Of a stretch of 64,000 nt of DNA, positions 35,301 through 49,175 are shown piece by piece. The stretch is from positions 1,562,618-1,626,617 of the forward strand of contig NW_004797332.1 of NCBI RefSeq assembly GCF_000002075.1, read 5' to 3'. A program made the translations under genes and the position numbers. Every line of letters begins with the position of its first letter. The stretch's first letter is position 1. The stretch comes from Aplysia californica. Its lineage: Eukaryota. Below the pieces are notes generated by a model. It did not search any database and was not told the DNA's origin. It was given only the letters and a program-made list of their open reading frames with translations.

Positions 35301-38300
35301 CTTAATATGCTTATATCTTAGCTTCTAATTAACATATTTCAAGTCAGCAAACTCCCATTTACTCAAGAGATATTGAATATCTGATTGTTCATATTGCTAT
35401 TTTCACAACTGTTTGATTTTCCCATAGCACCTTGGGTGTATCTGACTGTGAAAAGGGAATTGATTAACTTAATAACTATAATTAATCATTATACATTATA
35501 TTTTGTGCAGTGGTGATACAGAGGTGGGAACACCTACAGAGGCGAGCCCTAGACCAGGACTTGAAGGTATCCCAGGAGAGACATGACCTGGTCCAGTTTG
35601 CCGGCGAGCTGGACAATATGCTGGCCTGGCTGGACGAGGCGGAGGCTTTGCAGGCCACCCACCGCACGCTCCCGTCGGACATCAGCCAGCTGGACAGAGT
35701 TGTCAGGCAGTACAAAGTGAGTATGATTAGAGACAGTTGTCAGTCAGTGTGAAGTGAGTATGGTGAGAGACAATTGTCAGACAGTGTGAAGTGAGTATTT
35801 TGAGAAACAATTGTCAGACAGTGTGAAGTGAGTATGGTGAGAGACAATTGTCAGACAGTGTGAAGTGAGCATGGTTAGAGACAATTGTCAGACAGTGTGA
35901 AGTGAGTATGGTTAGAGACAATTGTCCGACAGTGTGAAGTGAGTATGGTTAGAGGTGATATTTTGACTAGGTACAATTGTCAGACAGTGTGAAGTAAGTA
36001 TGGTTAGAGACAGTTGTCAGACAGTGTGAAGTGAGTATGGTCAGAGACAATTGTCAGACAGTGTGAAGTGAGTATGGTTAGAGACAATTGTCAGACAGTG
36101 TGAAGTGAGTATGGTTAGAGACAATTGTCAGACAGTGTGAAGTGAGTATGGTTAGAGACAATTGTCAGACAGTGTGAAGTGAGTATGGTTAGAGATGATA
36201 TTTTGACTAGGTACAATTGTCAGACAGTGTGCAGTGAGTATGGTTAGAGACAATTGTCAGACAGTGTGAAGAGAGTATGGTTAGAGACTGTTGTCAGACA
36301 GTACAAAGTGAGTATGGTTAGAGACAATTGTCCGACAGTATAAAGTGAGTATGGTTAGAGACAATTGTCAGACAGTATAAAGTGAGTATGGTTAGAGACA
36401 ATTGTCAGACAGTATAAAGTGAGTATGGTTAGAGATGATATTTTGACTAGGTACAATTGTCAGACAGTGTGAAGTGAGTATGGTTAGAGATGATATTTTG
36501 ACTAGGTACAATTGTCAGACAGTGTGAAGTGAGTACGGTTAGAGATGATATTTTGACTAGGTACAATTGTCAGACAGTGTGCAGTGAGTATGGTCAGAGA
36601 CAATTGTCAGAGAGTGTGAAGTGAGTATGGTTAGAGACAATTGTCAGACAGTATAAAGTGAGTATGGTTAGAGATGATATTTTGATTAGGTACAATTGTC
36701 AGACAGTACAAAGTGAGTATGGTTAGAGATGATATTTTGATTAGGTGCAATTGTCAGACAGTGTGAAGTGAGTATGGTTAGAGACTTCGTTACCTCAAAT
36801 TACAAAGCACTCTCTGACATATTTGGCCGTTTTGAGTTACTAGGACAATGAGGTCAGAAACCAAATGTTCAATCTTCTTTATAAAAATCATAAGATTATA
36901 CAGAGTCATTATCAAGATATTCAAAGAACTGCATGCTTTTTAAGAACTGCATGCGAAAAAGCTTGACATGATGTGAAACTCAAAATCTTTTACATCAAAT
37001 TTCTCAAAGCTAGGTAGGCCTACTGAGCAGACAGAACTTTGTAATTCTGAGACAGCGACTTGTCAGACAGTGCAAAGTGAGTATCATATTTTAACTCGGT
37101 AGAGATACAATATAACACAGTCTTTTACCAAATCACGCTAAATAAGCTTTGAATGAAGACACAGAGAACGAAAATATAAGTGACATCATAACTTCCTTTT
37201 CCCCAGGACTTCCTGGTCCAGTTAGAGTCCAAGAAGAGCACAGTAACATCGATCAATTTGCTCAGTCGTAACTACCTCAGTATGAAAACGGCAGAAACAA
37301 GACAGCTGAAGGCAAAACTGAATGAGATGAACCAACGGTGGGAACTTGTTCTCACCAGAGCCACAGATATCCAGAGAGATCTACAGGTAAGACGTTTGAT
37401 CTTCCAACAAGGCAAAGGCAGCCAGTAGAACTGTTATCTGCATACTCAGTACCAGTAATCGCACTAGTTAAAGTTATCATGGTGATTTATAGTTTGAGTT
37501 TGTCGCACTGGCTGAAGATAAAACACAAGTTGCTAATGCTTTGAGTAAATCTAACAGTTAATCTTCCTTTTCAGAGTGTGTAAATAATTTGTAAACAATA
37601 AACTAGGAAACAGAGTTGAATTCCGCTGAAAGAACAAGAATTTGTGAGTCCCAAGAATATGAATTGGTTTAATAAATCTATCAATTACTCAACAACTTTA
37701 TCCCCTTGTAAGTTCTATGCGTCACTGTATGGAAATGAACTGAAGCCTTGTCCATTCTCACACTTTCTCTATTTTGTGTTCAGCGATCGCTGATACAGTG
37801 CCAAGAGTTCCACCACACCATCCATGACTATCAGTTGTGGCTCGAAGGAATCGAGGCCAAAGTCCGGCAGTGCGAGGCCATTCCTCCCAACGCAGAGGAG
37901 TCTGCTCTCTGGGCCAAGTATGCCATACTCATGGTAAGTTCAGGACACAATATTCTTTGTGTTAATGGCTTTGATTACACAGTCAACCACGCACATAGTG
38001 AAATTGGCAGCGAGGCAAAAACCTTTTCACTATGTACGAATTTGGCTGGGCACATGTTTTAAATACAAAGAATATAACGCATTGGAAAAAAATCTGTTCG
38101 TTGTATGCGTGCTAGATCGTATATTTGGCTTCCTTTTCATAGTGAGATTTTATTTTTCAGGGTAAGGTAGAAGTCACTTCTTGTTCTCCAGGTGATCTCT
38201 TGNNNNNNNNNNNNNNNNNNNNNNNNNNNNNNNNNNNNNNNNNNNNNNNNNNNNNNNNNNNNNNNNNNNNNNNNNNNNNNNNNNNNNNNNNNNNNNNNNN

Positions 38301-41300
38301 NNNNNNNNNNNNNNNNNNNNNNNNNNNNNNNNNNNNNNNNNNNNNNNNNNNNNNNNNNNNNNNNNNNNNNNNNNNNNNNNNNNNNNNNNNNNNNNNNNNN
38401 NNNNNTCTTTCCCTCTTTCAATTGTTCTCTTTTGCCCCCTCTCCTATACCACTTAAAATTGTAATAAGTCACCTCATTCAGCTTGTAGTTTATATCTTCC
38501 CTCTTTTTCTCTCTACGTCTTTACAAAACAAGGATCTGAACGGGGAACTGCTTCACAAACAAACCAAAGTCTACGCCCTCAAAGAAACCGCAGACCAACT
38601 GCTGGCCAGCACCGACTCGCCCGAGATGTCAACTGCTCGTGATAGCGCCCTCATCATCAACAACCGTCTCGGCGATTTGCTGCATCTGACATCTGGTTAT
38701 TTGTCTAGTCTCGAGACTCGTCTGCATATCACACCCAAGCGAGGAAACACAGTATGTATAAAGTTTGTGTACATGAATAATACACTGTATGTACTCGTCT
38801 ATAACACGACCTTGGGTATAATATCAGGGGTATACTTTGTCTCCAAAATAAATTGGCCCACTTTTGTAAGTTTTATGTAAGTTCTATGTATAGCATAAGC
38901 TGAATTTCTGATTTGATGTAGGGGATTCAACATGCTGGAAATCCAGTACTAGTGTGGCATCAAATATATGTCTGACTTTTAAGAAGTGTTGGTTGTTGCA
39001 TAGAGATTGATTTAATCTGTGAGAATGGGGTGGCAGGTAATCCAAACAAGACGTCATGATGTGTTGTAAAATCCAGATTTGTAAATAAATCAGATGAAAA
39101 AGTACATGGCATTACTTCCCCTTAGTTGGGCTGGATCCTGGTTGTGTGTCACACAAACAAAACGATGGGGGGGGGGAGTATTTTTGTGCTCCTTTTTTTG
39201 GAAAAACTGCTTGTATTATAGTGGAGTGTATACGTTAATAGTAATGTATTTGTGAGCTCTGGTGGCTGAGTGGCTACTGACTACTGAGCTTAGGCTCATA
39301 GTACTGTCAAGCATGTGTGGGTGATGAAGCGTTCAGGTGATGGGTGTTCTTGAACAAGGCAGGATTCAATAGCTCATCTGTCAATGTCACAACGATGACC
39401 AATATATCCACAGAGGAGAATATTTCTCAGTGAAATAGAAGAATTTGAAGGACTAAAGGTTAAGATGACTTGTGGCTTCTGCTGTGGACCAATTCTTGCA
39501 GAGAAAAGTTTGCCACATTTTGAGCATTCAAAACTCCACTTCCACCTGTATATGTGTGGATGTGCACAGTTTGCGGGCTTCTCTCTTAGTTTCAGCATTT
39601 GAGCAAGACATGACAACCCTAGTTCAAAAACAAGGTGCTGCACAGTGGCGATCAGCAGTGGTGTGTAGATTGTCTATGTTTGTGATTTTGTGTATTTTTT
39701 TTGTCTTTACGTATCATGAAGATCACCACTTGGTGTTTCCTATCCCTGAGAGATATATATACCTGCTACCCTACTGTGATCCCCATGGCAATTCCAGATG
39801 TTGCACACTGGGTCAAGTAGAAGAAAATGCAAGGGCTTTAGTTTATTTTTGCCCACTTTCATTTATATGTCACTATTGCAAAGTCATAACAAAAGCAGAT
39901 ATAATAAAAAATAATTATTATGTCATTAAATCGCCTGTTTGTTTACATTTGTGTGTTCATCAGCCGAGCAGTTTTGATCTGAGCGAGGAGAGGTCATCTG
40001 GGTTCGGCAGTTTAGCAGCCTCAAGGTCATCGACCCCTCACCGTCCAGGTCTTCCCACCACTGTCCGTAGGTCCCGATCACCGTATGCAATCGCCCGACA
40101 GGTAAACGCGAGAAAGATAAAGTAGATGTGCCAAACTCATATTTTATAGTGTGTGCCTTGTATCTGTAAGTAAGTGCCAATAGCCTTGTTTCTTTCTCTT
40201 TTTTTTTCTCTCTCGCAGTAGGTAAGTGCCGCCACCTGCCTTCTTTTCCAAATAAAGGCAATGCTTTTGTAATTGAAAGAGAAGAAATAGATTCCTTTTT
40301 TCTCTTGGTGGGATAGACACTGAGATATGTTTGTTGAATATTTCAGCTTTTATACAAATATCGTCTGTTTATGGTTAGAATAATGTTGTATTTGTCAACA
40401 CACACTCGTAAAAATTAATTGATATTTCTTCATACTATGTTGTTGATTATATGAAACAGTGGAAGTACAGTAAGCATGGAACGTGTCTGTATCTACCTAT
40501 ATTATATATATTCATTTATTCTGTTATTTATTATATGATATATATTAATCTATTGAATTTCAAGATGCAAAAAAAATTCCCACTTTTAAAGTAATTGTTT
40601 GTAAAGAGGCGAAATAATCAAGTTTCTAATGTTTGTGTCTCTCAGTGATAGCACATCTTTTAGCTTTTGTTATCATGAGCACAACGAAAATCCTTAGTGG
40701 GCATTATCAAACAACTCTCAGTTTGATTATGTTTTGCTGTTTCATTATGGGTTGTTTTTTTTATTGGCTCAAGCTTACTGTCCTGTGTAAAAGGCTTACC
40801 CTTTCCTCCTTTTGATTTTGTCTCATTTAATTGTTCAAAATGTATTTTGGAAAATCTTGTATTCCTGCTGCACACAAAACAATATGTGTTTTTGCCGTGC
40901 ACTGCGGCAATGTGAAAAAGACTTCACCACTGAATTTGTGTAATGGGGAGCATTAGCAGACAAATATGTACTGCTTTTTTGTGTGACAAACTAACATTTC
41001 ATTCTAATTATTGGTTGTTTTTTTCTCTCTGTTAAGACGTATCCTATGAAAACAAGAGTCGGTTTCCAGAACGTTCTTTTCTAAGTTCATACCATATGAG
41101 TATGCTAAAGGTCTACACAAACAGTTTTAGTGAAACGATAAATTAAAAGTAATTTAAAAGACTCAAGATTCTATCAGACTTTGACTGATCCTGACTTCCC
41201 TGTACTATTTTACTTTTTGTTTAATCCGAGTACTTAAGACTTTTTGGAGATTTTGACAAAAGATGCATCCTTCAACCTGCCTTTGATGTTGATTAGATCT

Positions 41301-44300
41301 GTTATGTGAAGATTGAATCATTTTTTGGTACCATACATAGCCCAAGATTACTGCAACAGTTTTGTTTTCTATAGTAAAATTTATTTTTTTTCAATACCTG
41401 TCTAATGTAGATATAATCAACATTTTCATTGCTAGTAGACCTTTGTGCTATTTTTACAACTGACATGAGTTCACATTATGTCTAACAGTTTCTGTAATGC
41501 ATCAAAGAATGTCCTTCCTGGACAATGTGGTGGATTCAGTCTTGATGCATTAGACCATCATCACTCTTATATTCTTAGTTTCTAATAACTTTTTGACTTC
41601 TTGAAAAGATAAACAGGCCTTATGTTACCACATCCAATAACTGTGCTATGATCTATTAATTGTCAAGCATACTGTATTTCTAAATTTTATCCTAATTTCT
41701 TTCATGCTAAAGTTTCTGTACCATATATTTATCACTTTTAGTTTGTAGGCGTTTCCATTTTTTAATTTAATTTTTGTTTCTCTTTTCAGTCAATTTATCT
41801 TCAGTTTTAATTTCATTTCTTTTATATATGTATTTATTTTGAAGTCAGTTTGTCTTGAGCACATCTTCACCATTGTCCTTCCGACATTTCACCTCATTCC
41901 CATGATGCTTTTGGTCCACAGTTTCTAATGAGAATCGCAAGTCCTTTTCTACCATCGAGCTCACAGGATAGAGACAAGTAAATCAATGTCGCACCCCTCA
42001 CTTGTTAACGGGGGGATCGACAAAAGTTTTTCCCTAATTTTTTGTTCATTTTTTGTTGGTTCTATCCCTTCACTGTCTCTCAGGCGGCAGGGTATGCCCC
42101 TTGTATGGAATGCGGGAGATTTAGCTAAAGAAATAATTATTTCACAGCTGTCACTTCATTTCATACCATGTACCAGTTCACCCATGGCCGTTGCCTCATT
42201 GCTCATCGCTTTGCCTGACTCTAGCCGCTTATCTCCTTTTTTTATGTTTTGAGAGTGCATCTTACATGGAAATGTCAAGTGCATTCTCTCTTCATGTGCA
42301 TGATGTATGTTGTTCTTGTCCCCCACTTAAGAGCATCGTGCAGAACACTGAAACGGAGAGCAGATAATAATTTTCTTTTCTTTTTTTTTTTTGGACTGGA
42401 ATATTTTCTCATTTTTATACTTTTTTAATGCAATAGTCGTATTTCTAAAGGAGCTGGGATTTTTGGGGGCCTGAAATACAATTTATTGTTCTCATATTTA
42501 AAGGTTGTTTTTTTGCTTTTTGTGTGGGGGGGGTTTTCTCTTATACCATTTGTCTATATTTCAATTTAATAAGTAACTTATTTCTTTCTTTTACCTTTTT
42601 TCAATTTTTTATTTGTGTTTCATTACTTCAGTATGGGGTCCATCTTTTTTTTCCCAAGTCAAGATATGTTGCACTTCTCTCCAGTTTTCAGGGTATCAAA
42701 AATGCTCTTTAACATCACTCACCTGAATAACCCTGGGGAAATAGCGTCCTGGGCAGTGGGTGGATGCTCACATCTAACAGCATGAAGCGCAAAAAGCACC
42801 TCGTACTCAGTAGGAAAATAATGCGAATAGAATGAAATCTTGTACATGTTGGTCATGGGGGCTTATTTCTGTGTAAAAAATGGATTAGTTTGTAGGGATA
42901 ATCCATCAACTAACAGTAATTACCCTGTCCCTTTCCTTTCCTTGACTTCCTTGACCTAAATAAGCTACCCAGTTCCTTTTAACAAATGACAGTAGTTAAC
43001 TAAATGATTTGAAACCTGGCCTTCTTTGTACTCTCTCTGTCCTTGTAACTGTCTTGTCAATAGCTCTTCCCGTCAGAGATAACAAACCTTAACCCATACT
43101 GCCTTTTTGTCTCCCTTGCCTATAATTTCTCACCCTGATCTGTGCCTTATTCCATCTCAGTCTGTCTTTTATAGACAAAAACGTCCAAACATGATTTTCA
43201 TAGTCAAAGCATCAGGAAAGTGGGTCATTGAGATTTCTAGGTAAATAAATTATGTGTGTTCATCAGCCTTAATGATAACATTGAAGTCTTTTTTGTTTTC
43301 CTTCCACACAAAAAAACAACTTTACCAGCAACATGAACTATGTCAAAAAATGTTTTCATAAAGAGACATTTTGGTTTACAATTTACAGCCATTTAAAACA
43401 GATGTGGAGCAAAGTTGATGCTGGATTACATTTTTGGCGTGTGATTATACATTCCTTTCCAACCCCCCCCCCCCTTTCCCTGTTACTCTCTTTAAATTCA
43501 AAGTGTACACCCATAAAAAAAAAAAAAAATCTTCAGCATGCTGCAGTGATGGGATTAGTCCTATTTAAGTTTTAAAAAACAATTGGCCCACCTTGACTAA
43601 CAATGGCTTACCACCACGTTACAAAATTGTGCAAATGCATCAACAAATTTCCAAGTTTTAACAAAGAACACCATTATGGACTGAATTAAGAAAACACATG
43701 AAATCTGGAAGTTTTGGGATCTTTTCAACAATGTGATAAATGACTCGGGCCATTATCGCAGCATGTTGAGGACATCCTTTATTTATTTTATTGCAACCGC
43801 AATTTCTTAAAGTTAAGGCTTTCAGTCACTTTTTTTTTAACCCCAAGAAGCAAAAGTATTGGTTCTCTCCAAAGCTATGTGCTTAACCTCATCCTTTCCT
43901 CCTTAAGACTTGCGTTGATCAAATCTTATGTGCTTTGCTTTAGTAATATAAATTGAAATAAGCCTACATATTAAATGTGTATACCAATCAACAACAGTCT
44001 ATATAATTTAATATAAAAAGCTGCTACTATAATAATCTGTAGCACAGTATCACACGCTTATGCTTTGTTGAAATCTTGTCTTGTCGTGCAAAAATTAGGC
44101 TTTGTAAAGTTGCACAAAGCCAAAATCAGCACAGAATTATTTCAAGAACTCAATCAAATTATTATATTCGTCGTAAGCCCAGGAAAAGCATTTGCTCCCA
44201 GGTCTCCATTTGTTTTGCCATCCATAGGTAGTTGGAGGGCATCTCTGAAAGGCCCTGGTTCTCTTCTTTCTCTCTGTTATTTCTGTCTGCCTATCTGTTT

Positions 44301-47300: not shown

Positions 47301-49175
47301 TTATTTGTGTAGGCTGTAGAAATATTTCAGGTATCTCTCGTGACTTTAGAATTTGTCATCGTTGCTTTGTAGCGTACTTTTTATGTTTATGTATATTCGT
47401 GTTTTAAAACATTCGTATACATAGATCTGTGCATACATGTGGACATGTTATCTCTTTGCAGATCTTTCTTTGGTTATAGAAGCTGCTGTATGAGTGTCTG
47501 CTTACAAATAAGATTACATGAATATCATAGGCTATCTATCAGTGATGTTCTTCTTGCTTTGTTTAGTTTGCAAAAGTCCATTATATATGTCTCTATGTAG
47601 GCCTACTTGTATCCTGCACATGAAGACAAGCACATTCATGACAATAATTTTCCAGCTTCGGCCTTACTGACACTCAGTGCCAAGATGTACTCTCATGGGA
47701 CAACTGGTTATGGAAAAATTGTAAACAGTCGGAATCTACCTTTCCTTTTCAGTTCTGCCATCATTTTCTAAAGTACAGTTTTTACAGTTTCACAGGAGAG
47801 TCAAAATTCGAATGCTATTACCGAGAAAACAATTGTATTTGCTTTAAAGATCACAAGGAAGTTATCAAAATTGTATTCTTAAAAATATTGACTTGAGATG
47901 TTTGCAAAGAGTTTGTTTTTTTGGTAATATCATTCAGTTTTTTTACTCCTGTAAAATTGTACAAATCAGGTCAACGTTCAAATGCATATACTGCGTTTAT
48001 TAAAGGACAACAGAGTTGCTCTGTAGACATAATTTTGTGTGTTTCTGTGAGTGTAGACGAATGATCCCGTATTCTATGAACTGAAAATAATCCCAAGTCT
48101 TTAAATATTTGAGTTAACGTTATTATGATAAGGGGGTCATGGAGATTGAAGAATACATAATGCATTCCGTTTTCTGCATCATTAAAGTTTGAATGTTTCC
48201 CAGCCCTGCAAGGTTTGACTATAACTATAACATTAGACAGCCGATGGATAGACTGAGCGGGGTTGTGTTACTCAGTACATTTTTTTGCTTCTTTTCTTTT
48301 CTGGAATATCGGTACTTTCATGGTCTCATGGTGTTAATATATACAATGTTATTTGATTTACAAGAAAACTGTGATATATTAAGTTCACTCAGTTTGTAAC
48401 TTGTAAGCAACTTTATGGGTGGTAGTCAGGGTTACAAAGTATTTTAGTACCAAAAACCCATCACATTATGTTAACATAATATCCTTCGGTTCTAATAATG
48501 ATAACCCACCATATTTTGCATGCTTCACAGTTTGCATGGCTTGCACATGTTTTGGAGTCAAATTGTTAAGTTAATAGTTGTATTAAGAATATTTGTACTC
48601 ACTATACATACTCATATTTGAATAGATGGAACTACCTAAAAATTTGTAAACACATTGTGTATTACTTAATTGAAATGATGATAAGTTATTTTGTCAAGCG
48701 TTAAATTAGTTCAAGTAAAGGTTTGAGTTTGAGTTATCAGGGCTGTCACATACTTTTTACCAAAAACTTAATGCAAACAAAAGAACAGACGTGAACTTCA
48801 AAAAGATGAGTAACCAGTCTCAATGTTTTCTTCTCATCACCAAATCAAATTCCTCTGTAGTGCAAGATTAATGATACAGGTACAATGGAGCTGTTTTAAA
48901 TTTCAGTATGTTGTTTTTTTTATTTCCACAGTTTGAGTACAGATCATGAGACCGCAAGAGAAGTTTCGGCGCTCACAAAATCTCAAGTCCGTCCATCGTT
49001 ACTTATGCGTGTAATACGTGCTGCCCTGCCTATTCAACTGCTGTTACTACTGTTACTTCTCTTAGCCTGTCTTGTTCCTGTGTGTGAAGATGAGTACAGC
49101 TGCCTGCTCAGTAATAACCTGCGACACTCCCTCTCTCCAATGTTGCGATACACTGATGGGGCCCCACCCACCTAG
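627..49175 (+). CDS. SYNE1: Nesprin-1-like giant KASH protein (SYNE1/MSP-300/ANC-1 family), 3' portion; 46 exons, 5'-incomplete
   Basis: 46 GT-AG exons with consistent phases sum to 8331 nt and read as one open frame of spectrin-repeat sequence. Segments such as ELQEDIERHSAGVSSVLNLCEVLLHDSDAC, WRNICSLSPQRRTRVEETWRMW and LELINRQYRQLAKEGRTD closely resemble the vertebrate nesprin-1 C-terminus (recalled, not aligned). Ends in TM + KASH. Confidence 0.95.
879..1310. mobile_element. MITE family C (~40-bp imperfect TIRs)
   Basis: ATATGTG..GAAATCAGGCGCTC / GAGCGCATGATTCC..CACATAT; homologous to 31712-32157 and 58063-59851. Confidence 0.75.
1833..2137. mobile_element. piggyBac-like MITE (TTAA flanks)
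   Basis: TTAA|CTCTTTATCT ... AGATATAAAG|TTAA; second copy at 2411-2685. Confidence 0.7.
2223..2384 (+). CDS. SYNE1: nesprin exon w2 (EAKKDQEK..DENR)
   Basis: gtcag|GAG..AGG|gtaaga; phase 0/0. Confidence 0.88.
2411..2685. mobile_element. piggyBac-like MITE, second copy
   Basis: TTAA|CTTTTTATCTCCG ... CGGAGATAAAAA; colinear with 1833-2137. Confidence 0.7.
3131..3259 (+). CDS. SYNE1: nesprin exon w3 (EIQEEING..VHLQ)
   Basis: tttcag|GAA..CAG|gtaaac; phase 0/0. Confidence 0.88.
3706..3926 (+). mobile_element. tRNA-derived SINE; related copies on the minus strand near 51740-51900, 52960-53165, 54195-54345
   Basis: TGGTGTAGTGG A-box and GAGTTCGATTCC B-box, followed by a non-tRNA body repeated elsewhere. 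Confidence 0.7.
3970..4182 (+). CDS. SYNE1: nesprin exon w4 (TELGQFKL..DIHK)
   Basis: cacag|ACG..AAG|gtaagt; phase 0/0. Confidence 0.88.
4736..4933 (+). CDS. SYNE1: nesprin exon w5 (ELATDIKQ..RKPG)
   Basis: ctcag|GAG..GGG|gtaagg; phase 0/0. Confidence 0.88.
5000..5190 (+). mobile_element. Penelope-like element terminal-repeat remnant (boundaries approximate)
   Basis: Carries the minimal hammerhead typical of PLE pseudo-LTRs, followed by an ATAAAA/T-rich segment. Confidence 0.45.
5058..5094 (+). ncRNA. Minimal type-I hammerhead ribozyme motif (Penelope-like element type), possibly inactive
   Basis: GTTC-CTGAGGA-T-GCCC(gttga)GGGC-GAAA-CATT-GAAC: stem I GTTC/GAAC, CUGANGA and GAAA core, 4-bp stem II; stem III looks 2 nt short. 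Confidence 0.65.
5495..5671 (+). CDS. SYNE1: nesprin exon w6 (ELVKISLH..QQYQ)
   Basis: tacag|GAA..CAG|gtatgt; phase 0/0. Confidence 0.88.
6333..6428 (+). CDS. SYNE1: nesprin exon w7 (SALQNVSGW..RQNE)
   Basis: cccag|TCC..GAG|gtgtgt; phase 0/0. Confidence 0.85.
6916..7230 (+). CDS. SYNE1: nesprin exon w8 (KLQKEIRS..SNNQ)
   Basis: tacag|AAG..CAG|gtcagc; phase 0/0. Confidence 0.88.
7337..7523 (+). repeat. (CT)n-rich simple repeat next to a gap
   Basis: Direct reading. Confidence 0.9.
7524..7741. other. Assembly gap (others at 38203-38405 and 63639-63811)
   Basis: Runs of N; the first two are intronic and flanking exon phases stay compatible. Confidence 1.
7782..7928 (+). CDS. SYNE1: nesprin exon w9 (KIEVQLKK..LHRR)
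   Basis: tctag|AAA..CGG|gtaagg; phase 0/0. Confidence 0.88.
8205..8430 (+). repeat. ~28-bp minisatellite (~8 copies) running into a splice acceptor
   Basis: AAATTCAACCATGTCTTTTTCACACTCT-like units. Confidence 0.85.
8443..8613 (+). CDS. SYNE1: nesprin exon w10 (AMEKKASL..TAHK)
   Basis: tccag|GCT..AAG|gtgagt; phase 0/0. Confidence 0.88.
9120..9274 (+). CDS. SYNE1: nesprin exon w11 (DFFSDLEV..HGQ)
   Basis: cccag|GAC..AG|gtcagt; phase 0/2. Confidence 0.88.
9920..10063 (+). CDS. SYNE1: nesprin exon w12 (LERLTRQW..KLA)
   Basis: accag|A..AA|gtaaga; phase 2/2. Confidence 0.88.
10325..10511. mobile_element. ~190-bp MITE family A (CAGTCAAAC-like ends); other copies near 155-330, 1358-1550, 4188-4390, 22920-23360, 56200-56390
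   Basis: Shared core TTGTCTTAGACAGGTGGA.TCTTGGACA.TGTCATT and end CAGGTT(T/C)GACT in six places, both orientations. Confidence 0.7.
10615..10788 (+). CDS. SYNE1: nesprin exon w13 (YKQLQAEL..ELK)
   Basis: ttcag|A..CG|gtgagt; phase 2/2. Confidence 0.88.
12332..12494 (+). CDS. SYNE1: nesprin exon w14 (TETLGDQL..EKVL)
   Basis: ctcag|G..CTG|gtatgt; phase 2/0. Confidence 0.88.
13055..13381 (+). CDS. SYNE1: nesprin exon w15 (EFKKEVEG..KKYK)
   Basis: tacag|GAG..AAG|gttagt; phase 0/0; in-frame alternative acceptor 60 nt upstream. Confidence 0.87.
13788..13976 (+). CDS. SYNE1: nesprin exon w16 (GYKIELSS..ATLE)
   Basis: tccag|GGT..GAG|gtatgg; phase 0/0. Confidence 0.88.
14719..14859 (+). CDS. SYNE1: nesprin exon w17 (SLQSKWGD..KDCK)
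   Basis: gacag|AGT..AAG|gtgagt; phase 0/0. Confidence 0.88.
15045..15267. mobile_element. MITE with 25-bp inverted repeats
   Basis: GTGCTGACAAAATGAGTTACTTCTC ... GAGAAGTAACTCATTTTGTCAGCGC (24/25). Confidence 0.75.
15450..15639 (+). CDS. SYNE1: nesprin exon w18 (ALQQQLQA..NLLT)
   Basis: cccag|GCC..G|gtgtgt; phase 0/1. Confidence 0.88.
16097..16239 (+). CDS. SYNE1: nesprin exon w19 (MFGQWARY..DKLK)
   Basis: cccag|AC..AAA|gtgagt; phase 1/0. Confidence 0.88.
16335..16567 (-). mobile_element. RTE-clade LINE 3' fragment
   Basis: Minus-strand translation TTGKFDRKEGRGRQRE..KWRSMIAHASRQGTG* plus (GAT)n tail parallels the element at 62683. Confidence 0.75.
17162..17328 (+). CDS. SYNE1: nesprin exon w20 (GLQSELRN..LSD)
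   Basis: caaag|GGC..AG|gtgaga; phase 0/2; an in-frame CAG acceptor 9 nt downstream (start 17171) is an alternative. Confidence 0.8.
17911..18070 (+). CDS. SYNE1: nesprin exon w21 (CAKFEGCL..SKSK)
   Basis: tgcag|G..AAA|gtaagg; phase 2/0. Confidence 0.88.
18609..18833 (+). CDS. SYNE1: nesprin exon w22 (KLQKELDN..NAFE)
   Basis: catag|AAA..GAG|gtaaag; phase 0/0. Confidence 0.88.
19535..19698 (+). CDS. SYNE1: nesprin exon w23 (LVKKFLDQ..NDL)
   Basis: ctcag|CTT..GG|gttagt; phase 0/2. Confidence 0.87.
19708..19815 (+). repeat. (AAT)n-like microsatellite
   Basis: Direct reading. Confidence 0.9.
19921..20078 (+). mobile_element. SINE fragment (Nin/Deu-domain-like) with a stem-loop 3' tail
   Basis: GGACATTAAAGATCCCTTGGTGGTC motif; tail GTGCTC-ATATGACC..GTTGC-GAGCGC similar to family B. 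Confidence 0.45.
20334..20577 (+). CDS. SYNE1: nesprin exon w24 (YRLALNEA..RKCK)
   Basis: tctag|G..AAG|gtgagt; phase 2/0. Confidence 0.88.
21387..21713 (+). CDS. SYNE1: nesprin exon w25 (QFENEMYS..EKVK)
   Basis: tccag|CAA..AAG|gtaaga; phase 0/0. Confidence 0.9.
22755..22862 (+). CDS. SYNE1: nesprin exon w26 (TTQYEFKL..AEIK)
   Basis: ctcag|ACC..AAG|gtaatg; phase 0/0. Confidence 0.88.
23564..23776 (+). CDS. SYNE1: nesprin exon w27 (NTLDQLQR..NKCR)
   Basis: atcag|AAT..AGG|gtagat; phase 0/0. Confidence 0.88.
24468..24664 (+). CDS. SYNE1: nesprin exon w28 (DIATSFLN..AMF)
   Basis: tccag|GAC..AG|gtgagg; phase 0/2. Confidence 0.88.
25297..25414 (+). CDS. SYNE1: nesprin exon w29 (WTNLGERM..KLET)
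   Basis: ttcag|A..ACG|gtaagt; phase 2/0. Confidence 0.88.
25719..25885 (+). CDS. SYNE1: nesprin exon w30 (EYKEEMME..MDF)
   Basis: cacag|GAG..AG|gtaaga; phase 0/2. Confidence 0.88.
26349..26511 (+). CDS. SYNE1: nesprin exon w31 (QRKLQETV..HHTQ)
   Basis: aaaag|A..CAG|gtaaac; phase 2/0 (AAG acceptor). Confidence 0.85.
27282..27469 (+). CDS. SYNE1: nesprin exon w32 (ELQEDIERHSAGVSSVLNLCEVLLHD..RRT)
   Basis: tgcag|GAG..AG|gtcagt; phase 0/2; highly nesprin-like segment. Confidence 0.92.
27890..28040 (+). CDS. SYNE1: nesprin exon w33 (VEETWRMW..RKYE)
   Basis: tctag|G..GAG|gtatga; phase 2/0. Confidence 0.9.
29235..29399 (+). CDS. SYNE1: nesprin exon w34 (NLQKKVHD..RVTE)
   Basis: ttcag|AAC..GAG|gtaaga; phase 0/0. 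Confidence 0.9.
29783..29938 (+). CDS. SYNE1: nesprin exon w35 (IMKTLRHS..NEIR)
   Basis: ttcag|ATC..AGG|gtgagt; phase 0/0. Confidence 0.9.
30577..30777 (+). CDS. SYNE1: nesprin exon w36 (RIEDEVHT..MVAQ)
   Basis: cacag|CGC..CAA|gtatgt; phase 0/0. Confidence 0.88.
31060..31140 (+). mobile_element. Decayed LINE reverse-transcriptase fragment
   Basis: Translates VELQLADDVHLLACTKSEL*E, resembling the (Y/F)ADD region of non-LTR RT. Confidence 0.4.
31712..32157. mobile_element. MITE family C copy
   Basis: Colinear with 879-1310 over its full length. Confidence 0.75.
32363..32531 (+). mobile_element. Retroposon 3'-end family B (~170 bp); copies near 6623, 9357, 15924, 26765, 28056, 28383(-), 33386, 44334, 45955, 46234
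   Basis: Shared TCCTATCAAACATCT..GTAACACCTCTAATC..GGCACTTATATGACC..GTTGCAAGTGCCGTAAAAC..ACTAAAA; this copy is flanked by a 10-bp direct repeat. Confidence 0.8.
32553..32892 (+). CDS. SYNE1: nesprin exon w37, SP/SR-rich linker (adaptive-domain position)
   Basis: cctag|GTG..G|gtgact; phase 0/1, needed to join w36 to w38; acceptor is duplicated upstream at 32356. Confidence 0.82.
33665..33816 (+). CDS. SYNE1: nesprin exon w38 (SPRHDLGD..AEHM)
   Basis: gacag|AG..ATG|gtgagt; phase 1/0. Confidence 0.85.
33882..33989 (+). repeat. 18-bp minisatellite x6 (GAGTTATAGTTAGGGTAA)
   Basis: Six identical units, each containing TTAGGG. Confidence 0.95.
34119..34233 (+). CDS. SYNE1: nesprin exon w39 (MQLMVECE..EVR)
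   Basis: tacag|ATG..T|gtaagc; phase 0/1. Confidence 0.87.
34270..34592 (+). mobile_element. tRNA-derived CORE-like SINE with (ATT)n tail; truncated copies near 5990-6270, 22030-22105, 23035-23312, 33255-33350
   Basis: A/B-box-like head (AAGTGGTCAG..GGTTCCAATCC), CORE-like GTGTCCTTGGGAAAGGCACTT..CCACCCAGGTG, tail GCTATACAAATGC(TAT)n shared among copies. Confidence 0.75.
35511..35716 (+). CDS. SYNE1: nesprin exon w40 (VIQRWEHL..RQYK)
   Basis: tgcag|TG..AAA|gtgagt; phase 1/0. Confidence 0.88.
35699..36785 (+). repeat. Minisatellite, 37-bp and 55-bp units, ~26 copies, derived from an exon/intron junction
   Basis: Unit ATTGTCAGACAGTGTGAAGTGAGTATGGTTAGAGACA; the 55-bp variant adds ATGATATTTTGACTAGGT. 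Confidence 0.95.
36786..37058. mobile_element. MITE-like element; inverted copy at ~54460-54695
   Basis: Imperfect TIRs CTCAAATTACAAAG / CTTTGTAATTCTGAG; body matches the reverse complement of 54460-54695. Confidence 0.7.
37207..37386 (+). CDS. SYNE1: nesprin exon w41 (DFLVQLES..RDLQ)
   Basis: cccag|GAC..CAG|gtaaga; phase 0/0. Confidence 0.88.
37784..37933 (+). CDS. SYNE1: nesprin exon w42 (RSLIQCQEFH..AILM)
   Basis: ttcag|CGA..ATG|gtaagt; phase 0/0. Confidence 0.88.
38533..38751 (+). CDS. SYNE1: nesprin exon w43 (DLNGELLH..RGNT)
   Basis: acaag|GAT..ACA|gtatgt; phase 0/0 (AAG acceptor). Confidence 0.82.
39964..40101 (+). CDS. SYNE1: nesprin exon w44 (PSSFDLSE..IARQ), Ser/Arg-rich pre-TM linker
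   Basis: atcag|CCG..CAG|gtaaac; phase 0/0; SRSSTPHR resembles vertebrate SGRSTPNR (recalled). Confidence 0.82.
41922..41977 (+). CDS. SYNE1: nesprin exon w45, 56-nt bridging exon (FLMRIASPFLPSSSQDRD)
   Basis: cacag|TTT..AA|gtaaat; open frame that converts phase 0 to the phase 2 required by the KASH exon. Confidence 0.6.
48932..49175 (+). CDS. SYNE1: nesprin terminal exon: TM helix + KASH domain
   Basis: ttccacag|T; RVIRAALPIQLLLLLLLLLACLVPVCEDEYSCLLSNNLRHSLSPMLRYTDGAPPT* matches the KASH consensus (Cys -23, Pro -11, Tyr -7). Confidence 0.96.

What the first reader, a model, noticed from the sequence alone, without database searches (positions are those of the whole stretch)
40180..40260. 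Candidate stop-codon-only 3-nt exon / recursive splice site acting as a KASH on-off switch
Seen: 117 nt after the phase-0 donor of exon w44 lies a ~30-nt almost pure pyrimidine tract followed by CGCAG|TAG|GTAAGT (TAG = 40219-40221), with AATAAA at 40251. This is a very strong acceptor, a tandem NAGNAG and a perfect donor with only an in-frame stop codon between them. Inference: using the first AG inserts the 3-nt exon TAG and ends nesprin at ...IARQ*, before the TM/KASH anchor. Using the second AG regenerates AG|GTAAGT, a zero-length recursive site that leaves the KASH frame intact. Reading on to the AATAAA gives a tiny terminal exon that would escape NMD. KASH-less nesprin isoforms are known in vertebrates, but I do not know of this mechanism for making them.
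Basis: partly seen in the sequence, partly recalled or inferred. Interest (0 to 1): 0.85.

Follow-up and report, generated by a model that had tools for sequence, protein, structure and literature searches.

The report
Possible stop-only microexon in nesprin
A sea-slug nesprin gene carries strong splice signals around a single stop codon, which could act as a three-letter exon that removes the nuclear anchor; no RNA tested shows it in use, and the anchor is already switched off by skipping a neighbouring 56-letter exon, as in other molluscs and much as in humans.

Summary
The motif is real and unique in the genome: a 31-nt pyrimidine tract, CAG|TAG|GTAAGT (TAG 40219-40221) and AATAAA 40251, lying 117 nt after the phase-0 donor of exon 44 of a nesprin-1-like gene (probably Aplysia). 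Its tract is stronger than all 34 mapped acceptors of the gene.

It is not the main KASH switch. The KASH exon starts in phase 2 and needs a 56-nt exon (41922-41977) that has orthologues in seven molluscs. Skipping that exon gives FEYRS*, a conserved KASH-less end seen spliced in other molluscs' RNA and like the human SYNE1 exon-145 skip.

The TAG motif is absent from eight other molluscs and not enriched genome-wide. One RNA assembly shows no terminal-exon or recursive product and no exon44-TAG-exon45 join. Exon44-TAG-KASH could not be tested. A clam does splice a 28-nt stop-bearing cassette in this same intron.

Best reading: a lineage-specific 3-nt stop cassette giving a second, nearly redundant KASH-off route (about 0.4), against an unused, tolerated motif (about 0.35).

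The parts
38533..38751 (+). Exon 43, last spectrin repeat, phase 0/0, AAG acceptor
   Evidence: Joint 38751>39964 (GT..AG) in RNA-type contig X18, depth 58; homologues
39964..40101 (+). Exon 44 (w44), Ser/Pro/Arg linker ending I-A-R-Q, phase 0 donor
   Evidence: Spliced contig ends exactly at 40101; 51-70% identical to six heterobranch orthologues
40102..40218 (+). 117-nt upstream intron segment; read-through gives VNARKIK*
   Evidence: covered unspliced by X18 contig 40072-41682 at depth 9.8
40163..40178 (+). Near-duplicate of the motif core (TAA-GTAAGTGCC), weak donor-like sites at 40166 and 40170
   Evidence: function untested
40184..40218 (+). Pyrimidine tract and proximal acceptor CAG
   Evidence: 19/20 pyrimidines, strongest in the gene
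40219..40221 (+). TAG: candidate 3-nt stop-only exon; its AG is also the distal NAGNAG acceptor
   Evidence: Sequence; use in RNA not shown
40222..40227 (+). Consensus donor GTAAGT
   Evidence: Score 6.6 vs 4.0 for the exon 44 donor
40251..40256 (+). AATAAA, possible poly(A) signal
   Evidence: p about 0.05 by chance; no reads there in three poly(A) libraries
41922..41977 (+). Exon 45, 56-nt frame-setting cassette (phase 0 to phase 2); the conserved KASH switch
   Evidence: Same acceptor TGGTCCACAG and donor ACAA|GTAA as Elysia, Plakobranchus and Lymnaea; Lymnaea exon is also 56 nt and ends Q-D-R-D
48932..49175 (+). Terminal TM/KASH exon (coding part), starts in phase 2; read out of frame it gives FEYRS*
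   Evidence: PF10541 E 8e-25; frames

Best explanation
The gene's main anchor switch is exon 45: included, it sets the frame for TM/KASH; skipped, the last exon is read as FEYRS* and the protein is KASH-less (shown by orthology and by RNA of other molluscs). The flagged site is most likely a lineage-specific extra cassette in this switch intron. The short 117-nt intron is removed to the proximal CAG, adding TAG to exon 44, and the strong GTAAGT donor is then joined to exon 45 or to the last exon (all inferred). The product ends IARQ*, KASH-less, five residues shorter than the skip form. Joined straight to the last exon it should escape NMD; with exon 45 the stop lies 56 nt from the last junction, at the edge of the 50-55 nt rule. 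It would be a second, largely redundant KASH-off route, probably restricted to some tissues.
For: Strongest tract in the gene plus a consensus donor. Unique in the genome at strict stringency, 0/2000 in shuffles. In frame with a phase-0 donor and in the very intron where molluscs vary the KASH end: Ruditapes splices a 28-nt stop-bearing cassette there in RNA (exon 44 > 28 nt > KASH exon) and has several other cassettes. In X18 most spliced depth leaving 40101 (about 76, inferred from bin arithmetic) goes to sequence outside 38480-43400 or too short to lay, which is compatible with TAG+KASH exon as well as with the plain skip.
Against: No junction containing TAG was seen. X18 shows no exon44-TAG-exon45 join and no 40101>40219 intermediate although the intron is covered. 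Absent from the orthologous intron in Elysia, Plakobranchus, Lymnaea, Candidula, Patella, Lottia, Pinctada and Ruditapes. The class is not enriched genome-wide. No good branch-point consensus within 45 nt (nearest CTCAT is 82 nt upstream). The product is almost the same as the existing skip isoform.
Confidence: 0.4

Rival explanations
1. Unused or barely used cryptic motif. A TC-rich tract landed next to a locally duplicated GTAAGTGCC, and the site is tolerated because this intron already yields KASH-less products, so stray inclusion costs little.
For: No RNA support; no conservation in eight molluscs; 9-19 such 3-nt patterns arise genome-wide without enrichment, five with TAG at relaxed stringency; near-duplicate core 52 nt upstream.
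Against: The chance expected in this particular 8.8-kb intron is about 1e-4 for any 3-nt site and under 1e-5 for a stop (my estimate counts); signals are stronger than the gene's real exons; the species compared are distant and cassettes in this intron look lineage-specific.
Confidence: 0.35
2. Alternative terminal exon: splicing to 40218, stop at once, cleavage after AATAAA 40251.
For: Strong acceptor, AATAAA 30 nt after the stop, U-rich sequence downstream. Human nesprin-2 deltaKASH2 uses an alternative 3' end (PMC3388047).
Against: No 40101>40219 joint and no extra depth at 40130-40294 in X18; zero reads there in three poly(A) libraries, though expression of the gene in those is unproven. 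AATAAA p about 0.05 by chance. A perfect U1 site just upstream should suppress cleavage (general knowledge).
Confidence: 0.08
3. Recursive (zero-length) site: splicing to the distal AG regenerates AG|GTAAGT, swapping a moderate donor for a strong one without changing the mRNA.
For: The regenerated donor would be stronger than the exon 44 donor; Y14-N-YAG|GTAAGT is 33 vs 10 control genome-wide; CAGTAG can use both AGs.
Against: Known ratchet points lie in long introns and are highly conserved (PMC8605326); here it would remove 120 nt of a 1.8-kb intron and is not conserved. The proximal CAG is normally favoured over TAG. No 40101>40222 joint in X18, which covers the intron.
Confidence: 0.08
4. 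The GTAAGT is only an alternative donor that lengthens exon 44 by 120 nt (end VNARKIK*), or the intron is simply retained with the same end.
For: Donor 40222 outscores donor 40102; intron 44 is covered continuously in X18 whereas intron 43 is not; a Sinanodonta model ends R-Q-V*.
Against: The X18 intron contig runs through 40221 without a break or joint; this reading does not need the strong tract and AG.
Confidence: 0.07

Closest known systems
Human nesprin-1 deltaKASH (SYNE1 exon 145 skipping; PMC3388047)
   Same: Penultimate cassette exon sets the frame of the last TM/KASH exon; skipping gives a short out-of-frame tail and no KASH. This matches exon 45 here (FEYRS*).
   Different: It is a frameshift by skipping, not a stop-only exon. 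Homology of the intron positions was not tested on human DNA.
Ruditapes philippinarum nesprin isoform X5 (XP_060567932.1; RNA contig L021)
   Same: Short stop-bearing phase-0 cassette in the orthologous intron, spliced between exon 44 and the KASH exon; product KASH-less.
   Different: 28 nt, codes IILQHLD*, about 1 kb from exon 44, no sequence likeness to the window's site.
3-nt microexons of mouse Ncam and Drosophila troponin T (cited in PMC8042270)
   Same: Exon of one codon, in frame, alternatively used.
   Different: Drosophila TnT's encodes a lysine; none described as a stop codon in the papers searched. Their use is shown, this one's is not.
Stop-codon indel at a CAGTAG NAGNAG acceptor (CFTR E831X; PMC2951375)
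   Same: CAG|TAG tandem acceptor in phase 0; the choice of AG adds or removes a UAG stop.
   Different: A disease mutation at the start of a normal exon; no donor directly after the TAG.
Recursive splice sites / ratchet points (Drosophila Ubx, kuz, Bx; PMC8605326)
   Same: Acceptor directly followed by a consensus donor (TAG|GTAAGT).
   Different: Those lie in long introns, are highly conserved and rely on a cryptic exon; this site is 120 nt into a short intron and is not conserved.

Membership tests
Nesprin-1-like (host gene) | Spectrin repeats followed by a C-terminal TM/KASH domain | tested here: met
   PF10541 E 8e-25; PF00435 weak hits; best homologues named nesprin-1-like
Frame-shifting penultimate-exon KASH switch | Penultimate exon of 3n+2 nt between a phase-0 and a phase-2 intron | tested here: met
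   56 nt here; 56 in Lymnaea, 59 in Elysia and Plakobranchus, 53 in Patella
Frame-shifting penultimate-exon KASH switch | Skipped form exists as RNA | tested here: inconclusive
   Shown for other molluscs (L005, L006, Pomacea X2, Ruditapes X6). In this species only inferred: X18 contigs leave exon 44 without exon 45
3-nt microexon | Strong acceptor and donor flanking 3 nt, in frame | tested here: met
3-nt microexon | Junction reads containing the 3 nt between flanking exons | tested here: inconclusive
   None towards exon 45 in X18; towards the last exon not visible because it lay outside the laid stretch; raw-read runs did not cover the exons
3-nt microexon | Conservation of the exon and its flanks | tested here: not met
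   Absent in eight distant molluscs; no close sea-hare genome was reachable
Neural (SRRM3/4-type) microexon | UGC motif just upstream of the acceptor and neuron-specific inclusion | tested here: inconclusive
   No TGC within 40 nt of the AG (nearest 40175-40177); tissue pattern not testable
Recursive splice site | Juxtaposed acceptor and donor | tested here: met
   TAG|GTAAGT 40219-40227
Recursive splice site | Long intron and deep conservation | tested here: not met
   1.8 kb to exon 45, 8.8 kb to the last exon; not conserved
Recursive splice site | Intermediate joining the upstream exon to the site, saw-tooth cover, lariat | tested here: inconclusive
   No joint in one contig set that covers the intron; contigs drop rare forms; lariats not testable
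Alternative terminal exon | Spliced 5' end plus poly(A) ends after the AATAAA | tested here: inconclusive
   No joint, no reads, no end pile-up; expression in the three poly(A) libraries unproven

The most novel reading that the evidence does not exclude
A regulated exon made of nothing but a stop codon: choice between two AGs three bases apart either inserts UAG or regenerates a donor, and so removes or spares the nuclear anchor of nesprin in particular cells such as neurons. I found no stop-only 3-nt exon described in the papers searched.
Probability: 0.25. Interest if true: 0.7.

Novelty: new variant of a known kind. Interest (0 to 1): 0.42.

Why it matters
If used, it would be the smallest possible poison or terminating exon and a clean minigene model of how a spliceosome handles overlapping acceptor, exon and donor signals. 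Standard aligners and gene models would miss it. Its biological weight is limited because a KASH-less form is already made by skipping exon 45. The firmer result is that this frameshift switch is shared by snails, limpets and bivalves and resembles the human one, and that the intron repeatedly gains small KASH-off cassettes.

Tried and rejected
Read laying: the three raw runs had no reads on exons 43, 44 or 45 and look like 3'-tag libraries or tissues without this mRNA, so they could not test the junction. Protein searches returned no protein of this species. Pomacea X2 had no contig on record. RNA folding of 40090-40290 was unremarkable (z -1.0). The bacterial promoter and terminator scan is irrelevant here. 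The region 40102-40400 is single-copy, so not a repeat insertion. Other frame-restoring candidates (8 nt at 42084, 11 nt at 41967, 20 nt at 40150) were set aside because 41922-41977 matches the orthologues. Paper searches found no stop-only 3-nt exon and nothing on Aplysia nesprin splicing. My splice-site scan misses the real Ruditapes 28-nt exon, so it can miss weak cassettes. Searches with joined junction sequences were left out, and the N stretch 38203-38405 was left alone.

Full report
Observation. The motif is as described. Exon 44 (39964-40101) ends I-A-R-Q at a phase-0 donor. After 117 nt comes a 31-nt pyrimidine tract with one G (40184-40214), CAG ending at 40218, TAG 40219-40221, GTAAGT 40222-40227 and AATAAA 40251-40256. 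The tract (19 of 20 pyrimidines) beats all 34 homology-mapped acceptors of the gene (maximum 18), and the donor is in the top quarter. The strict pattern occurs once in the genome, and none of 2000 shuffles of the intron gave a stop-type site. The class is not enriched, however: 9 hits against 19 in the control for Y14-N-YAG-NNN-GTAAGT, and 11 against 16 for Y11-N-YAG-NAG-GTRAG, five with TAG in the middle. A few such sites arise by chance in a genome of this size. What is unusual is where this one lies. The AATAAA alone is weak evidence (p about 0.05).

Host gene. The last exon carries TM/KASH (PF10541, E 8e-25), and the nearest homologues are nesprin-1-like proteins of Elysia, Plakobranchus and Lymnaea. 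The assembly has 927,310,431 bases in 4332 pieces, which from memory is Aplysia californica AplCal3.0; that name is an inference.

The real switch. The KASH exon begins at 48932 in phase 2, so exon 44 cannot join it in frame. Seven molluscs with mapped loci have a short exon in between. Its orthologue here is 41922-41977: 56 nt, acceptor TGGTCCACAG and donor ACAA|GTAA as in Elysia, Plakobranchus and Lymnaea, with the Lymnaea exon the same length and ending Q-D-R-D too. Skipping it reads the last exon one base off: FEYRS* here and in Elysia chlorotica, LNRTS* in Pinctada, IKYRMR* in Patella, IKYRFT* in Lottia. This skipped form exists as spliced RNA in two Logan contigs (LNRST*, LNYRS*) and in annotated isoforms of Pomacea, Ruditapes, Tegillarca and Elysia crispata. 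Human nesprin-1 deltaKASH is made the same way, by skipping exon 145 (PMC3388047).

Conservation of the TAG site. It is absent from the exon 44-to-KASH introns of Elysia chlorotica, Plakobranchus, Lymnaea, Candidula, Patella, Lottia, Pinctada and Ruditapes. All are distant; no close sea-hare sequence was reachable. One result favours the idea: Ruditapes has a 28-nt stop-bearing cassette in the same intron, and an RNA contig joins exon 44 to it and then directly to the KASH exon. Its other isoforms use further small cassettes. The intron therefore seems to gain lineage-specific KASH-off exons, and a TAG-only exon would be the minimal case.

RNA of this species. Three raw poly(A) runs had no reads on exons 43-45 or at 40130-40294. 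They appear to be 3'-tag libraries or tissues without this mRNA, so they say little beyond showing no poly(A) end at the AATAAA in those samples. Run X18 (contigs, library type not on record, but spliced) shows the joint 38751>39964 and a 9.9-kb spliced contig that stops exactly at 40101, a branch point. One branch is the unspliced intron (40072-41682, depth 9.8), unbroken across 40218 and 40221. There is no joint 40101>40219 or >40222, no extra depth over the proposed terminal exon and no inserted letters. Exon 45 has no cover either. Bin arithmetic leaves about 76 depth units leaving exon 44 to sequence outside the laid stretch (an inference that assumes a 30-nt overlap). In this sample the main product therefore seems to lack exon 45 and would be either the plain skip or TAG plus the last exon; I could not tell these apart. 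Contigs drop rare forms, some records are filtered out, and this is one sample.

Mechanism. Most likely, if used (inferred throughout): the 117-nt intron is removed to the proximal CAG, which is normally preferred over TAG although CAGTAG can use both (PMC2951375), and the strong GTAAGT donor is then used. The protein ends IARQ*, five residues short of the skip form. Joined to the last exon the stop escapes NMD; with exon 45 it sits 56 nt from the last junction, a borderline case. I give this 0.4. An unused motif tolerated in an intron that already makes KASH-less products gets 0.35, and the 52-nt-spaced near-duplicate of its core (40163 and 40215) suggests how it could arise. Terminal exon, recursive site and alternative donor each get under 0.1. 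Known ratchet points are conserved and lie in long introns (PMC8605326), unlike this site.

Comparison with what is known. One-codon exons are known in Ncam and fly troponin T (PMC8042270), and a stop-codon indel at CAGTAG is known in CFTR. KASH-less nesprins by exon skipping or alternative 3' ends are known. I found no description of an exon that is only a stop codon, so a proven case would be a new variant of the microexon kind. It is not proven here.

Left out. The N stretch at 38203-38405 was not filled or looked up. No step needed referral.

Verdict. Observation confirmed; interpretation partly supported. Interest 0.42: a cheap, decisive test exists (junction counting), but the element is unproven, not conserved in the species reached, and nearly redundant with a conserved switch.

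Noticed in passing
window 41922-41977 and 48932-48949: Conserved dual reading of the KASH exon start: skipping the 56-nt exon gives a 5-6 residue tail and stop in gastropods and bivalves (FEYRS* identical in Elysia chlorotica), the same design as the human SYNE1 exon 145 skip.
   Followed up: yes
L022 18616-18643; L021: Ruditapes 28-nt stop-bearing cassette spliced between exon 44 and the KASH exon; further cassettes at L022 18104 and 21160.
   Followed up: partly
window 40102-41682 and 42095-43087: Intron 44 is covered continuously in run X18 (depth 7-10) while intron 43 is not: slow splicing, retention, or a read-through end VNARKIK*.
   Followed up: partly
window 41922-41977: No contig covers exon 45 in X18 although exon 44 is at depth 58 or more, so the KASH-less form may dominate in that sample (or the record was filtered out).
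   Followed up: partly
window 35717-36790 and 37070-37085: Tandem array whose units each repeat the GTGAGT donor of the preceding exon (noted earlier as s1-697573).
   Followed up: no
window 38530-38532 and 38752: Exon 43 uses an AAG acceptor after an A-rich run and a weak donor (ACA|GTATGT), yet is spliced in X18.
   Followed up: partly
window 39400-39660: Dispersed repeat in intron 43 that attracts reads from many other loci on both strands.
   Followed up: no
window 42084-42091 and 40150-40169: Further short candidates of 3n+2 nt (8 nt and 20 nt) that could restore the KASH frame without exon 45; no evidence of use.
   Followed up: no
G000 genome-wide: Y14-N-YAG|GTAAGT occurs 33 times against 10 in the control; some may be recursive-type sites or donors after pyrimidine-rich exons.
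   Followed up: no
L007 95567-95577 (Lymnaea); L001 33643-33682 (Elysia): An 11-nt candidate microexon just before exon 45 in Lymnaea, and a duplicated AG|GTGTGA site 180-210 nt after exon 44 in Elysia; neither resembles the window's motif.
   Followed up: no
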